Part shown: piece after piece, positions 1 to 29,599 of the stretch
How the letters are laid out: the number at the start of each line of letters is the position of its first letter
Position numbering within the stretch: position 1 is the first letter of the stretch
IMG/VR virus record: IMGVR_UViG_3300023179_004149
Coordinates: 1-64,000 of that record
Reading direction: 5' to 3' (one strand)
Length of the DNA: 64,000 bases
Program-made: the position numbers and the translations under genes
The notes under the pieces: model-generated
Told to the model about the DNA's origin: nothing
Seen by the model: only the letters and a program-made list of their open reading frames with translations
Databases searched by the model: none

Positions 1-308
1 CCGATCAGTTTGCACTGAATCTTGATTTTGGCATAATTTGGTAGATCAACCATACGATAGTGCGTCATCCAGGGAAACATATCACTGGACATACGGTAAA
101 CCATAATACCATTATATAGGTTATACTTCAAAATACGCAAACAATCCGTGAGATTTTGTTGTATCAGTTCAGATACATAAGGTAACCCCTTACTTTCAAA
201 GGTTTTTTTAACCATACCACGATTAACGGTAACGTGATTTTGTTTGGTAACACCCTCGTTTATACCCATTGATATACAGCAATACCCAATATTCTGACTC
301 ATTTGCAT
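1..308 (-). CDS. uvsE: UV damage repair endonuclease (UvsE/UvdE family), 5' part only; runs off the window start
   Basis: Manual translation gives MQMSQNIGYCCISMG...NRGMVKKTFESKGLPYVSELIQQNLTDCLRILKYN...YRMSSDMFPW, matching the UvdE N-terminal motifs. Not in the ORF track. Confidence 0.85.
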   Translation of the reverse strand, partial: MQMSQNIGYCCISMGINEGVTKQNHVTVNRGMVKKTFESKGLPYVSELIQQNLTDCLRILKYNLYNGIMVYRMSSDMFPWMTHYRMVDLPNYAKIKIQCKLI

Positions 309-385
309 TTTTTGACAAAAGTAGATAAAATAACGACACCAACAAAATTTTTTTCGGGTTTTGACTATTTATAATAAAAAAGACT

Positions 386-856
386 ATGGAAAACATTAAA
401 TTCTCACAAGGGGCTGTTGATTTAATAGCGAAATTTGAAGGTTTTAGGTCAAAACCTTATCTTGACTCGGTAAATATCCCAACTATTGGGTACGGTACAA
501 CGTTTTATGAAAACGGTAAAAAAGTAACAATGAACGATGCTCCGATCACAGAACCAAGAGCTAAAGAAATCTTGTTAAATTATTTAAATAATCATATGTT
601 ACCTGAATTTAAAAAAAGTATTAAGGTTCAACTTGAACAACATCAGATTGATGCTCTCGCTTGTTTGGTTTATAATATAGGTAACGGCGCTTTCAAAAAT
701 TCAAGCGTGTTAAAAAACATAAATGAAAACATTAAATCGGGTGAGATGTTCGAGAAAAACTGGAAAGCCTGGAATAAAGGGGGTGGTAAAGTTCTTCAAG
801 GTTTAGTGAACCGTAGAGAAGGCGAGTATAAGTATTTTACAAAAGGTGTTTTATAA
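386..856 (+). CDS. Phage lysozyme/endolysin (GH24)
   Basis: FEG-x8-D-x5-TIGYG catalytic motif, YNIG, and C-terminal GLVNRREGE. Confidence 0.92.
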   Translation: MENIKFSQGAVDLIAKFEGFRSKPYLDSVNIPTIGYGTTFYENGKKVTMNDAPITEPRAKEILLNYLNNHMLPEFKKSIKVQLEQHQIDALACLVYNIGNGAFKNSSVLKNINENIKSGEMFEKNWKAWNKGGGKVLQGLVNRREGEYKYFTKGVL

Positions 857-4091: not shown

Positions 4092-4481
4092 ATGACGCTA
4101 AAAGATGTAACCTTAATAACCGCAAACAATAATCACTATCTTACGGTAGACGAGATAACCGAACGTTGTTTGTATTGCGTTAACGGTGAACAATATGAAG
4201 ATTTGTATTCGAATACACTCGATCAAAAGGTTGATTGGGTTAAAGGCATTATAGCTGGTCCAAATCAAATTGGTTTGGTGTTTGAACGAGAATTATCTGG
4301 TGGTCTGTGTTTGCTCTCACCATTTAATGGCTATTATTTGGCTGAGATAGAAAAAAATAACGGTTCCTGTAAAATTGAACTACAGGAACCGTCACATCAC
4401 AATAAAAATGATATCCACCCCAAAGATATCAAAATTGAACCAGTATTGGTTGATAATAAAGTAGTCATTCACCTCGCTTAG
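4092..4481 (+). CDS. Hypothetical protein
   Basis: 129 aa ORF with AT-rich codon usage. Confidence 0.55.
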   Translation: MTLKDVTLITANNNHYLTVDEITERCLYCVNGEQYEDLYSNTLDQKVDWVKGIIAGPNQIGLVFERELSGGLCLLSPFNGYYLAEIEKNNGSCKIELQEPSHHNKNDIHPKDIKIEPVLVDNKVVIHLA

Positions 4482-4626
4482 AGAATTTGCGTAAGAAGTA
4501 ATAGCACAAAAAGAACGTGGCCGATATAAGATAAAATATAATGTCGGTTATCCAGTACGATCCTCTCCACTTCATGATTCGGGCAAACAATCCATCGTAA
4601 CCAAAAAGTAGAAATCTCGAGTAAAA
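4465..4626 (-). pseudogene. Start-less diverged copy of the 3' two-thirds of the 5575-5790 membrane gene
   Basis: Translates FGYDGLFARIMKWRGSYWITDIIFYLISATFFLCYYFLRK, versus FGYDGLFALIMQSTGSYWITDLIFYLISVLFFTLHYFLRK in the intact gene. Confidence 0.85.
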
Positions 4627-4628
4627 TT

Positions 4629-5525
4629 TTAAATACCATCTTCAATTATTTTTTCAATATTTTCATAATCAATATATGAAATACGTATTAATTTAGGTGA
4701 GCCAGGTTGTGAACAAAACTCATTTTTTATTTTATCCTTCAACATCATTTCTTCATAATTTTTACTATATATTGTGTTCGGTATAAAATGTTGTTTACCA
4801 TCATATTCTATGCAAATATTCTGTTCAATTAAGAAGAAATCAAATGGTAATGGTTTTTTATATCTACATTCGAGGAATCTTTTTTGTTGAGTGTAGATTA
4901 TTGAATTATTATCAAGAAATTTTTTGATTTTTTCTTCCCCTTTAGATAATTTACAATTAGGGCATCCGATACCTTTAACATGATCATTGGGCCGCTGTTC
5001 AAACGGGCCATGATCTTTACATATAATTTTTATTTTAGTCTTAGTGTTTATATAAACAACATCAGAATAATCATATTTACTACCATGTTTCAATACGGCT
5101 TTATTAATAAATGATTCGTTATTATCTAATTTGGATTTTTTAATGGTTAATAACCCACAATCGGGGCAACCACAACCATTTATATGAACGGCTGGCTTTT
5201 GAATGAAAATGCCATGAATAGGGCACTTTATAATAACGGGTGTTCTATTATTAACATAATTACAGTCGGTATAAGTATATTTATTCTGGTGTATGATGTT
5301 AGCCTTATCAATGAATGATTGTGTTGTTAATTTGACACCACCCTTACATGTCGGACAACCAGTTTTTAATCTAATGTGATTATCTGGGGTTACAAAAAAT
5401 GAACCATGTTCTGAGCACACCAACTCAACCTTAGTTCTTGCATTTTTGTAATCAATTTGCGAATAATTGTATTTATTACCATGTACATTATTTGCTTGAT
5501 GAATGAATTTTTCGGATTTGTTCAT
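4629..5525 (-). mobile_element. Free-standing homing-endonuclease-like gene (three Zn-ribbon repeats plus PD-(D/E)XK/Vsr-like nuclease domain)
   Basis: Repeated C..HG.F...P..H..G.GCP.C; C-terminal PFDFFL...ICIEYDGKQH; likely start MNKSEKF after a TATTTATA motif. Confidence 0.8.
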
Positions 5526-5574
5526 AAAACCATTTACTATAAATAGTATGGGAAATCGTAAAATCAGCACTTGG

Positions 5575-5790
5575 TTACGATTTTCGTAAGAAATAATGTA
5601 ATGTAAAGAAAAGTACCGAAATAAGGTAAAAAATTAAATCCGTAATCCAATAAGAACCTGTCGATTGCATTATTAGAGCGAATAGTCCGTCGTAACCAAA
5701 AGGTAAGAAAAAACTCCCGAAAAATAAAGATATTGTGGCTAACCGCTCCCTCGAACGAAGGATTGTTTTTATTCTGTTTATTAGGGTCAC
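5575..5790 (-). CDS. Small membrane protein
   Basis: Two hydrophobic segments; coding status supported by the diverged duplicate at 4465-4626. Confidence 0.75.
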   Translation of the reverse strand: MTLINRIKTILRSRERLATISLFFGSFFLPFGYDGLFALIMQSTGSYWITDLIFYLISVLFFTLHYFLRKS

Positions 5791-5912
5791 CGTCCATATT
5801 TTAAGTTTAAATAATTATGCTTCATAACCTGGGTTTAGGTTATTGCGTTCTATATAAATATCTTGCGGATAATCAAAATTATAAAAGGTCAGAAAATTCT
5901 GACCTTTCTTTT

Positions 5913-6530
5913 TTACTCTGTAAATAGCTTGCTGTTGAGATTATGAATCTTCTTAAAGAAACGATGTAATCTTTCAATCTCGGCTACATTAACTTCACCA
6001 TCGTTTTCGATAACAACATCACAATACATCATCTTCTCATCTTGCGGCATCTGGTTCTTTATCTTTGCCATGATTTGCGTTTCATCGTGGCCCAAGTCCC
6101 TGGCTCTGATCCTGGCCATTCTAACCTCAGAACCAGCATTAACACCAATCATGAAATCAACCAGGTCATCCATATTATATTCAAAGAATATGGCTGATTC
6201 AACAAGGACATATGATTTGTACCAGTACTTATCGTAAAAAGCAAGAATGTCATTCTTTAGATAAGGATCAAAGATTAAAGCGAGATCAACTTTTTTCACC
6301 TTATCATTGAATATAACATCAGCAACATATTTGCGATTGTATTCATTGTTTTCATCAAACACATTCGGCCCCAGAAACTCAATAAGTTTTACCCTCAGCT
6401 CTTTGTTTTCTTTGATGAGAGTTTTTAACCTATCATCCATGACATATGTCGGAACATCCAGTTTTTCAAACTCTTTCAATATGGTTGTTTTACCAACCCC
6501 CATGTTTCCCGTAACGCCAATCTTAATCAT
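5913..6530 (-). CDS. coaE: Dephospho-CoA kinase
   Basis: IGVTGNMGVGKTT P-loop, ESAIFFE, R...RD, Q......K..CD.VIENDG. Confidence 0.9.
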   Translation of the reverse strand: MIKIGVTGNMGVGKTTILKEFEKLDVPTYVMDDRLKTLIKENKELRVKLIEFLGPNVFDENNEYNRKYVADVIFNDKVKKVDLALIFDPYLKNDILAFYDKYWYKSYVLVESAIFFEYNMDDLVDFMIGVNAGSEVRMARIRARDLGHDETQIMAKIKNQMPQDEKMMYCDVVIENDGEVNVAEIERLHRFFKKIHNLNSKLFTE

Positions 6531-15871: not shown

Positions 15872-16062
15872 CTTTCTCGTTAAAATACTGTTTTAATTCG
15901 TCAATGGTACAGTCCAATCGATATGATATCATATCTTTGGACATGGATAAAAGATAATTTTTAACATCTGTTAAAAAAGATATCATCTCTTCTTTCCACT
16001 CTTCAGTACCGACAATATGTTTTGTCTTCATCTTTATAGTTTTATATCTATAAATATCAGAG

Positions 16063-16135
16063 TGATTCCAGTGGGGATCGAACCCACACCTAATTGATTT
16101 AGAGTCAACTATACTGCCGATTATACTATGGAACC
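16063..16135 (-). tRNA. Amber suppressor tRNA (CTA)
   Basis: GTTGA-CTCTAAA-TCAAT anticodon arm; complete cloverleaf, short variable loop, A73. Confidence 0.85.
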
Positions 16136-16260
16136 GTTAAAACGCGCACTATGGGTTAAATGCGCACTCACCCAAAAATGATATATAGTTCACGGACATA
16201 ATTCCGCTGGGTTTTCACCGTTAGAACTGGATATCAACCATTCTTATTGTGACGTTTTAG

Positions 16261-16334
16261 AGGACAAGGATAGGATCGAACTACCGTTTGAGACTTTGCA
16301 GGTCCCCGCCTAATAACCACTCGGCCACTTGTCC
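16261..16334 (-). tRNA. tRNA-Cys(GCA)
   Basis: GGGAC-CTGCAAA-GTCTC; U73. Confidence 0.88.
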
Positions 16335-29514: not shown

Positions 29515-29599
29515 TGGCGGTCTCGATGGGATTCGAACCCATGATCTTCGCCGTGACGCGTTACAGGGCGACAGGGACGACCAACTCCCCTACAAGACC
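29515..29599 (-). tRNA. tRNA-Asp-like gene with a 7-nt insertion in the anticodon loop
   Basis: TCGCC-CTGTAACGCGTCAC-GGCGA; G73; encoded CCA. Confidence 0.75.

What the first reader, a model, noticed from the sequence alone, without database searches (positions are those of the whole stretch)
4465..5790. Endonuclease insertion that supplied a recoded replacement 3' end of its target gene
An intact 71-aa membrane gene lies upstream of the endonuclease and a start-less copy of its last ~50 codons lies downstream. The protein is clearly conserved while most third positions differ. Established: intron-less homing elements can repair the disrupted gene by carrying a cleavage-resistant duplicate. 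Inference: the downstream piece is the original allele, and the cut site lies near the FGYDG codons.
Basis: partly seen in the sequence, partly recalled or inferred. Interest (0 to 1): 0.6.

Follow-up and report, generated by a model that had tools for sequence, protein, structure and literature searches.

The report
Homing endonuclease cassette carrying replacement gene end
A selfish endonuclease gene in a 321-kb environmental phage sits inside a small membrane-protein gene and keeps that gene working by bringing its own differently spelled copy of the gene's last two thirds; a near-identical relative without the element shows that the leftover piece downstream is the original gene end.

Summary

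**Layout, all on the minus strand**
- 5790..5575: an intact 71-aa two-helix membrane gene.
- 5525..4629: a 298-aa endonuclease gene with three zinc-finger repeats and a Vsr-fold nuclease domain.
- 4614..4465: a start-less copy of the membrane gene's last 49 codons.

**The two copies**
- They share about 70-77% of their residues.
- About 60% of third codon positions differ, and synonymous sites are saturated.

**The decisive relative**
- L173 is a syntenic contig without the endonuclease. It holds one intact gene.
- Its first 71 nt match the front part of close relative L011 at 71/71.
- Its last 150 nt match L011's leftover piece at 150/150.
- So L011 equals the empty site plus a cassette of about 1.1 kb. 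The cassette is 1105 nt in the window (5719..4615).
- The insertion point lies between codons 24 and 28, 9 nt upstream of the FGYDG codons.

**Signs of mobility**
- The cassette is 98.5% identical between the window and L011, while the adjoining flanks differ by 7-17% (8-11% next to the junctions).
- About 165 other related loci have one copy and no endonuclease.

**Not tested**
Cleavage of the empty site and resistance of the recoded copy are inferred only.

**Standing**
This kind of element is known from fungal mitochondria. Gene fragments beside such nucleases have been noted in phages.

The parts
5575..5790 (-). Working 71-aa two-helix membrane gene (GTG start, TAA stop). It is a hybrid of a resident front part and a cassette-borne end.
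   Evidence: ORF list. Twelve homologues of 66-106 aa in the protein database and 200+ confirmed stretches in viral and metagenome contigs. The third-position bias shows this is the coding frame.
5720..5790 (-). Resident front part of the gene: codons 1-23 and the first two bases of codon 24.
   Evidence: It is collinear with the empty-site allele L173:174-244. L011 matches at 71/71 and the window at 63/71.
4615..5719 (-). The inserted cassette, 1105 nt. In order: replacement gene end, spacer, endonuclease gene, 14-nt tail.
   Evidence: This stretch is absent from the empty site L173. It is 98.5% identical between the window and L011 (16 differences in 1092 nt), against 7-17% divergence in the adjoining flanks.
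5575..5719 (-). Cassette-borne replacement 3' end of the gene (codons 24-71 plus the stop), spelled differently from the resident end.
   Evidence: Against the native allele of L173, codons 24-70 keep 36/47 residues while 30/47 third positions differ, and Ser26 is AGT instead of TCC. It is 82.7% identical in DNA to the endonuclease-linked gene of L003 but only about 68-69% to the remnants.
4629..5525 (-). Free-standing homing-endonuclease gene, 298 aa from the ATG at 5525. It has three DUF723/DUF4379 treble-clef zinc-finger repeats and a C-terminal Vsr-like nuclease domain.
   Evidence: PHROG 559/681/9084 and Pfam DUF4379/DUF723 hits. 3371 homologues, many named very-short-patch-repair endonuclease. 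The model has pLDDT 89.6. Residues 193-298 match Vsr 1cw0 at Z 11.2 and I-Bth0305I 3r3p at Z 9.6. It is single copy in the genome. dN/dS against L011 is about 0.3.
4615..4628 (-). A 14-nt tail of the cassette between the endonuclease stop codon and the point where resident sequence resumes. This is the non-homologous right junction.
   Evidence: The tail is identical in the window and L011 and is absent from L173.
4465..4614 (-). Displaced resident 3' end of the gene (native codons 28-76 plus the TGA stop). It has no start and is decaying in the window.
   Evidence: L011's copy is 150/150 identical to the intact gene of L173, while the window's has 12 differences. Three of these hit conserved positions: P30L and T44R, where 107 of 108 aligned relatives carry P or T and the last is gapped, and L39R, where R is never seen.
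4092..4481 (+). Convergent 129-aa gene whose last 17 nt overlap the end of the remnant. It marks the resident right flank.
   Evidence: The same convergent overlap with the intact gene is seen in the empty-site relative L173 (388..777 against 174..404). Its dS between the window and L011 is 0.97, against 0.037 for the endonuclease gene.
4357..4395 (-). Terminator-like hairpin (16-bp stem followed by a T run) about 70 nt downstream of the remnant's stop. It is possibly the original terminator of the membrane gene.
   Evidence: A consensus scan found 3 such sites in the region against 0.6 expected. The function is not shown.

Best explanation
A free-standing homing-endonuclease cassette of about 1.1 kb is inserted inside a small phage membrane-protein gene, between codons 24 and 28.

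**What the cassette holds, in order.**
- Its own allele of the gene's codons 24-71, with a stop codon.
- A 49-nt spacer.
- A Vsr-fold (EDxHD-type) endonuclease gene with three zinc-finger repeats.
- A 14-nt tail.

**What the insertion does to the gene.** The carried allele joins in frame to the resident front part, so the 71-aa protein is still made. The resident end (codons 28-76) is pushed downstream without a start codon and decays.

**Shown here.**
- The empty site exists in nature.
- It is identical to the flanks of the filled site in L011.
- The same cassette, with the same junctions, sits in two flank backgrounds that differ 5-10 times more than the cassette does.

**Inferred.**
- The endonuclease cuts the uninterrupted resident allele at or near codons 24-28.
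- The break is repaired from a cassette-bearing co-infecting phage. Homology is supplied on one side by the front part and on the other by the remnant.
- The cassette-bearing genome is immune. At one junction the site is respelled (9 of 14 nt differ), and at the other its left half is missing.
For: **Before/after pair.**
- L173 has the window's gene order but no endonuclease and one intact gene.
- L173 1-244 equals L011's left flank plus front part (243/244).
- L173 255-453 equals L011's remnant plus downstream sequence (199/199).
- The 10 nt at L173 245-254 occur in neither copy of the filled allele.

**Two allele classes.**
- The endonuclease-linked ends of the window, L011 and L003 are 83-99% identical to each other.
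- They are 68-69% identical to the remnant/native class.

**The divergence arose under selection.** pS is 0.84-0.92 and pN 0.16-0.23. This rules out a fresh in-place duplication.

**The cassette is younger than its flanks.**
- Synonymous divergence between the window and L011 is 0.031-0.037 in the cassette.
- It is 0.15-0.20 in the left flank, 0.18 in the remnant and 0.97 in the 129-aa gene.
- Fisher p ranges from 1e-3 to 8e-22.

**Remnant decay.** The window's remnant carries P30L, L39R and T44R at positions that are invariant or never R in 108 relatives.

**The endonuclease looks intact.**
- All zinc ligands and the conserved D229, E240, H246 and D264 are present.
- The nuclease domain has a Vsr fold, Z 11.2 and 9.6.
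- dN/dS is about 0.3.

**No splicing element.** No intron family was found, and the gene has its own stop codon before the endonuclease.

**Family norm.** About 165 other loci have one copy and no endonuclease.
Against: - No cleavage or homing was tested, so the endonuclease may be a passenger of ordinary recombination.
- The cut site is unknown. Free-standing T4 endonucleases often cut hundreds of bp from their gene (PMC2988022).
- The first difference between the two remnants lies only 7 nt from the right junction. A simple homing transfer between the window and L011 lineages therefore needs either a very short conversion tract or a later mutation there.
- The left edge of the low-divergence block is soft. 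The left flank is 94-97% identical, and the variable stretch at 5744..5768 encodes a poorly conserved N-terminal tail.
- L003 shares the leader, the whole gene and a related endonuclease (57% aa identity) in a different neighbourhood. The unit that first moved may therefore have held the whole gene.
- A protein tree on 46 columns puts the two copies as sisters, so the donor was a fairly close relative and was not identified.
Confidence: 0.85

Rival explanations
1. The cassette reached this place by general or illegitimate recombination between co-infecting phages. The endonuclease is inactive or played no part, and is just a passenger at a mosaic boundary.
For: No activity was tested. Phage genomes here are clearly mosaic. 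For example, L173 and L011 are identical up to L173:453 and then 12% different. The window-L011 identity drops sharply on the right of the element.
Against: The same junctions, to the base, occur in two flank backgrounds. The endonuclease ORF is intact with conserved catalytic and zinc residues and a dN/dS of about 0.3. The low-divergence block coincides with the cassette. The respelling is densest exactly at the junction, 9 of 14 nt.
Confidence: 0.1
2. The filled state is ancestral, and L173 lost the cassette by deletion.
For: Polarity cannot be read from two sequences alone. The two copies are homologous and could in principle recombine.
Against: Recombination between the two copies would give a chimera with a cassette-type front of the C part. 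L173 is remnant-type from nt 255 on, and it holds 10 nt (245-254) present in neither copy. About 165 other relatives have the single-copy state. The L173 gene keeps every conserved family residue.
Confidence: 0.03
3. These are old tandem paralogues of the membrane gene. The endonuclease landed between them and clipped the head of the second copy.
For: Synonymous sites between the copies are saturated while the protein is conserved, as for two long-lived working genes. The short protein tree puts the two copies as sisters.
Against: The closest element-free relative has one gene, made of the front part plus the remnant-type end. No locus out of about 165 has two copies.
Confidence: 0.02
4. The downstream piece is still a working small gene, translated from the TTG at 4590 into a 41-aa one-helix peptide.
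For: The TTG-started ORF exists in both the window and L011. dN/dS between the two remnants is about 0.28 on 12 changes.
Against: The window's copy has three radical changes at invariant or near-invariant family positions. The low dN/dS is expected anyway if most of the divergence predates insertion. The L011 copy is simply identical to the intact native gene.
Confidence: 0.03

Closest known systems
Mobile endonuclease ORFs (mORFs) of fungal mitochondria that carry a foreign C-terminal gene end: Allomyces macrogynus atp6 (Paquin et al. 1994, as described in PMC3630166), and Glomus atp6, atp9, cox2 and nad3 (PMC3630166)
   Same: The architecture is the same: resident front of the gene, then an in-frame foreign C-terminal part, then the endonuclease ORF, then the displaced native C-terminal part. 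The inserted and native ends are similar in protein but 64-81% identical in DNA there, against about 69% here. The native end matches the element-free relative.
   Different: The host is a tailed phage, not a mitochondrion. The nuclease is Vsr-fold with zinc fingers, not LAGLIDADG or GIY-YIG. The carried end has its own stop codon, and the endonuclease is a separate ORF 49 nt downstream rather than fused in frame.
I-Bth0305I and the EDxHD (Vsr-like) homing endonuclease family, which includes phage Hef (PMC3239194)
   Same: The C-terminal catalytic domain has the Vsr fold (Z 9.6 to 3r3p, 11.2 to Vsr) with conserved acidic and His residues. The family includes free-standing phage members.
   Different: I-Bth0305I is intron-encoded and binds DNA through NUMOD/helix-turn-helix repeats. 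This protein has three DUF723/DUF4379 treble-clef zinc-finger repeats and is not in an intron. There was no detectable sequence match to the solved chain by phmmer.
Intronless homing of free-standing T4-type endonucleases such as SegF, SegB and MobE (PMC2988022)
   Same: In both, a free-standing endonuclease gene spreads with flanking DNA by double-strand-break repair between co-infecting phages, and flanking markers are co-converted.
   Different: T4 elements sit between genes, or they split a gene into two working halves. Here the element sits inside a gene and restores it with a carried duplicate end. The 2010 review never uses a word beginning 'duplicat'.
HEG islands of ICP1-like vibriophages, which have fragments of essential genes next to nucleases (PMC10055350)
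   Same: Short gene fragments with DNA homology to full-length neighbours lie beside homing endonuclease genes. The authors propose that these fragments serve as recombination substrates. Nucleases sit at boundaries of genetic exchange, as seen here on the right side.
   Different: Here a matched empty site defines the junctions to within 10 nt. It also shows directly that the fragment is the displaced resident end of a gene whose working end came with the nuclease.

Membership tests
EDxHD / Vsr-like homing endonucleases | Catalytic domain with the Vsr (very short patch repair) endonuclease fold | tested here: met
   The AlphaFold model has pLDDT 89.6. Residues 193-298 match 1cw0 at Z 11.2 (rmsd 2.1 A, 99 aligned), 1vsr at Z 10.2 and 3r3p at Z 9.6. 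Foldseek gives probability 1.00 for the same chains.
EDxHD / Vsr-like homing endonucleases | Conserved composite acidic/His motif (E, D, H, D) in the catalytic domain | tested here: inconclusive
   D229, E240, H246 and D264 are invariant or nearly so in a 40-sequence alignment, and all are present here. They were not mapped residue by residue onto the I-Bth0305I active site.
EDxHD / Vsr-like homing endonucleases | N-terminal NUMOD / helix-turn-helix DNA-binding repeats, as in the prototype | tested here: not met
   The N-terminal 190 residues are three DUF723/DUF4379 treble-clef zinc-finger repeats. The DNA-binding module therefore differs from the prototype's.
EDxHD / Vsr-like homing endonucleases | Site-specific double-strand cleavage of the element-free allele | not testable with these tools
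   This needs the expressed protein and substrates L173:174-404, window:5575-5790 and window:4465-4660.
Free-standing (intronless) homing endonuclease gene | Not embedded in a self-splicing intron or an intein | tested here: met
   The endonuclease is a separate ORF with its own start and stop, and the host gene ends in TAA 49 nt before it. No Rfam intron family was found in 4200..6100 at E up to 1.
Free-standing (intronless) homing endonuclease gene | Presence/absence polymorphism at the same site among close relatives, with identical flanks | tested here: met
   L173 is the empty site, and L011 and the window are filled. The flanks of L011 match L173 at 243/244 and 199/199.
Endonuclease cassettes carrying a replacement gene end (mORF-type hybrid genes) | An in-frame carried C-terminal part upstream of the endonuclease ORF, with the native C-terminal part displaced downstream without a start | tested here: met
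Endonuclease cassettes carrying a replacement gene end (mORF-type hybrid genes) | The displaced part, not the carried part, matches the gene of element-free relatives | tested here: met
   L011's remnant matches L173 at 150/150 and the window's at 138/150. The carried end is about 69% identical in DNA.
Endonuclease cassettes carrying a replacement gene end (mORF-type hybrid genes) | The carried end makes the hybrid gene resistant to the element's own nuclease | not testable with these tools
   Only the sequence difference is shown: 9 of 14 nt differ at the junction, and 30 of 47 third positions.

The most novel reading that the evidence does not exclude
Carrying a respelled copy of the target gene's end may be a working third strategy for phage homing endonucleases, besides living in introns or inteins and living between genes. 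Under this reading the duplicate both repairs the interrupted gene and immunises the carrier. The displaced resident end is kept as the downstream homology arm for the next round of homing. This would let such elements invade the interior of short genes.
Probability: 0.45. Interest if true: 0.6.

Novelty: new member of a known kind. Interest (0 to 1): 0.5.

Why it matters
This is a clean natural before-and-after pair for an endonuclease insertion in an uncultured 321-kb phage.
- It fixes the insertion point to a 10-nt window.
- It gives the exact empty-site, hybrid and remnant sequences needed for a cleavage test.
- It shows that the hybrid-gene trick known from fungal mitochondria also operates in phages, here with a Vsr-fold nuclease.

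There is also a practical lesson. Gene callers annotated the overlapping wrong frame of this gene, and this hid the close relatives from protein searches.

Tried and rejected
**Searches for close or element-free relatives**
- The phage record collection held no close relative. Only short 69-70% matches to the endonuclease gene turned up.
- The first protein search with the 71-aa gene found only distant relatives. Callers had annotated the overlapping frame in the close relatives.
- Searching with that other frame is what found the empty site.
No read-level test for empty/filled polymorphism was made, and I did not try another route to reads.

**Function of the membrane protein**
- Pfam, NCBIfam and PHROGs gave nothing.
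- The ESM Atlas gave only unnamed clusters below 0.9.
- Its function stays unknown.

**RNA structure and splicing**
- A hairpin between the gene and the endonuclease start, which might have hidden the start site, is not supported. The fold z-score is -0.6.
- No intron or other Rfam family was found at the locus.

**Endonuclease sequence**
- phmmer against solved structures found no nuclease. Only fold comparison did.

**Phylogeny**
- A tree of the 46 shared columns puts the two copies as sisters and cannot name a donor.
- Identity to distant relatives is slightly higher for the working copy. That reflects decay of the remnant, not origin.

**Genetic code**
- I checked for an alternative code because a TAG-reading tRNA is present. 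Reading TAG through barely lengthens ORFs, so table 11 was kept.

**Corrected along the way**
- The apparent extension of homology of the remnant to 4632 was dropped once L173 showed that resident sequence resumes at 4614.

**Not used**
- The big representative search and complex prediction, because nothing rested on them.

Full report
**Setting.**
- The window is the first 64 kb of a 320,934-bp viral record, judged complete. The contig is Ga0214923_10000005.
- It is AT-rich (34.6% G+C) and holds 31 tRNA genes in the window.
- No close relative is in the deposited phage records.

**What is at 4465..5790 (minus strand).**
- Downstream of a dephospho-CoA-kinase-like gene (6530..5913, Pfam CoaE) lies a 71-aa ORF at 5790..5575 with a GTG start.
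- Next comes a 298-aa ORF (5525..4629 from its ATG).
- Then comes an open frame without an ATG or GTG head, ending in TGA at 4465.
- That frame aligns to residues 22-70 of the 71-aa protein at 71% identity. The own-genome six-frame search gives E = 5e-16.
- Differences fall 11/13/29 on codon positions 1/2/3. Synonymous sites are saturated (pS 0.84) while pN is 0.23.

**The gene.**
- It has no Pfam, NCBIfam or PHROG family and no Atlas lead.
- It does have a conserved family of small proteins with two hydrophobic helices. Twelve clusters turned up in the protein database. Pattern scans confirmed 120 stretches in viral contigs and 102 in metagenome contigs (80 loci kept from each), many on contigs of 250-370 kb.
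- Gene callers chose an overlapping 77-aa ATG frame (5797..5564) for the window's lineage. The third-position pattern and the family alignment show that the GTG frame is the real one.

**The endonuclease.**
- PHROG families 559, 681 and 9084 and Pfam DUF4379/DUF723 match it.
- It has 3371 homologues at E below 1e-10, several named very-short-patch-repair endonuclease by their source.
- A 40-sequence alignment keeps all Cys/His zinc ligands of three repeats, plus D229, E240, H246 and D264.
- The predicted structure has pLDDT 89.6. It shows three small beta-hairpin/helix repeats and a C-terminal domain (residues 193-298).
- That domain superposes on Vsr (1cw0, Z 11.2, 2.1 A over 99 residues; 1vsr, Z 10.2) and on the catalytic domain of I-Bth0305I (3r3p, Z 9.6).
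- I-Bth0305I is the prototype of the EDxHD homing family, which also holds free-standing phage members such as Hef (PMC3239194).
- The DNA-binding part differs from the prototype: zinc fingers instead of NUMOD/HTH.
- The gene is single copy in this genome and is not in an intron.

**Relatives with the element.**
- IMGVR_UViG_3300017917_002458 (L010/L011/L012) is about 90% identical overall and has the same three parts.
- L003 is a 1.9-kb contig from another neighbourhood. It has the gene followed at the same spacing by a related endonuclease (57% aa identity) and ends inside it.

**Relatives without the element.**
- In about 160 further loci the gene is single and no homologue of this endonuclease lies within 4-5 kb. 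None of these is close.

**The decisive relative.**
- I searched with the mis-called overlapping frame. This found L173 (ENA ERZ27292209, contig k141_206836).
- L173 has the window's gene order: the membrane gene convergent with and overlapping the 129-aa gene, then the 71-, 139- and 99-aa genes.
- It has no endonuclease and one intact 76-aa gene.
- Base by base:
  - L173 1-244 equals L011's left flank and front part (243/244; the 71 nt of the front part match at 71/71).
  - L173 255-453 equals L011's remnant and what follows it (199/199; the 150 nt of the remnant match at 150/150).
  - The 10 nt at L173 245-254 occur in neither copy of the filled allele.
- Hence L011 is an L173-like genome plus the cassette, and the downstream piece is the original gene end.
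- In window coordinates:
  - 5790..5720 is the resident front part.
  - 5719..4615 is the cassette (1105 nt).
  - 4614..4465 is the resident end.
- The insertion point lies between codons 24 and 28, 9 nt upstream of the FGYDG codons.
- L174-L176, and a place for which no DNA was available, are further single-copy, endonuclease-free relatives.

**The carried end is another allele, not a fresh copy.**
- Against the native allele, codons 24-70 keep 36/47 residues while 30/47 third positions differ.
- Ser26 is AGT instead of TCC.
- 9 of the 14 nt just after the junction differ.
- In 127 shared columns, the endonuclease-linked ends of the window, L011 and L003 are 83-99% identical to one another and 68-69% identical to the remnants.

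**The cassette is younger than its surroundings.**
- Between the window and L011 there are 16 differences in 1092 nt of cassette.
- This compares with 7/66 in the front part, 12/168 in the remnant frame, 47/806 on the left and 98/759 on the right.
- Synonymous divergence:

| Segment | dS, window vs L011 |
|---|---|
| carried gene end | 0.031 |
| endonuclease gene | 0.037 |
| front part of the gene | 0.20 |
| kinase gene | 0.15 |
| remnant | 0.18 |
| 129-aa gene | 0.97 |

- Fisher tests of the cassette against the left flank, the remnant and the 129-aa gene give p = 1e-3, 5e-3 and 8e-22.
- The same junctions in two flank backgrounds, together with a much younger cassette, fit repeated site-specific transfer.

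**Decay of the displaced end.**
- The window's remnant has P30L and T44R. At both positions 107 of 108 aligned relatives carry P or T, and the last is gapped.
- It also has L39R, where R is never seen.
- L011's remnant is still identical to the intact native gene. Its insertion is therefore very recent.

**Mechanism.**

Shown:
- the architecture;
- the empty site;
- the identity of the flanks;
- the two allele classes;
- the youth of the cassette;
- an intact nuclease gene under purifying selection (dN/dS about 0.3).

Inferred from what is established for homing endonucleases (PMC2988022, PMC3239194) and for fungal mORF hybrids (PMC3630166):
- The enzyme cuts the uninterrupted native allele at or near codons 24-28.
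- Repair copies the cassette from a co-infecting carrier, using the front part and the remnant as homology arms.
- The carrier is immune because the site is respelled at one junction and halved at the other. A site lying wholly inside the remnant would leave the carrier cleavable, which argues for a site that spans the junction.
- The very first event needed one non-homologous join, the 14-nt tail next to native nt 255.

**Open points.**
- The cut site and the resistance are untested.
- The first remnant difference between the window and L011 is only 7 nt from the junction.
- The left edge of the young block is soft.
- L003 shares the leader and the whole gene with the window, so the original donor unit may have been the whole gene plus the endonuclease.
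- The donor is not identified. The short tree puts the two copies as sisters.

**Comparison and novelty.**
- The architecture matches the mORF-borne foreign C-terminal ends of fungal mitochondrial genes. These were first described for Allomyces atp6 and later for Glomus atp6, atp9, cox2 and nad3 (PMC3630166).
- In phages, a 2010 review of T4-type elements describes intergenic residence and split genes but no duplicates (PMC2988022).
- A 2023 study of ICP1-like phages notes gene fragments beside nucleases and suggests they serve as recombination substrates (PMC10055350).
- This locus is therefore a new, unusually well-resolved member of a known kind, in a new host type and with a Vsr-fold nuclease.

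Noticed in passing
window 16062..16135 (-) and 29515..29599 (-): The window holds 31 tRNA genes. One has anticodon CTA and would read TAG (ARAGORN labels it Pyl). Another has an 8-nt anticodon loop (tgta). Only 2 of 54 long ORFs end in TAG, and reading TAG through adds little ORF length. Whether TAG is suppressed at some stage of infection is open.
   Followed up: partly
window 5797..5564 (-), and L003:1229-1447: An ATG-started 77-aa ORF overlaps the real GTG-started gene in another frame. It is what gene callers annotated in this lineage, which hides close relatives from protein searches. In L003 a T-run one base shorter fuses the ATG frame to the real frame. That could be a sequencing error or a real frameshift; this was not resolved.
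   Followed up: partly
L011:3386-3469 and L173:1-50, against window about 5917: The relatives L011 and L173 carry a tRNA-Cys gene between the kinase-like gene and the membrane gene. The window lacks these 97 nt there and has a tRNA-Cys at 16260..16334 instead.
   Followed up: partly
L173:454 onwards (about window 4415), inside the 129-aa gene 4092..4481: L173 and L011 are identical for 199 nt to the right of the insertion point and then about 12% different. This is a second recombination boundary, inside the convergent gene. The window-L011 dS of that gene is 0.97, far above its neighbours.
   Followed up: partly
window 5883..5908 (both strands) and 4395..4357 (-): A two-way terminator-like hairpin lies between the kinase-like gene and the membrane gene. 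A 16-bp terminator-like hairpin lies about 70 nt past the remnant's stop, inside the convergent gene. There is no terminator-like site between the membrane gene and the endonuclease gene.
   Followed up: no
window 5862..5755 and L003:1163-1270: The 66-nt leader and the first 36 nt of the gene are nearly identical between the window and L003 (the 36 nt at 100%), although the upstream genes differ. The next 25 nt are highly variable in all comparisons. This could be a conserved start or regulatory region, or part of the mobile unit.
   Followed up: no
window 5913..6530 (-): The phage encodes a dephospho-CoA-kinase-like protein (Pfam CoaE, E = 3.6e-28).
   Followed up: no
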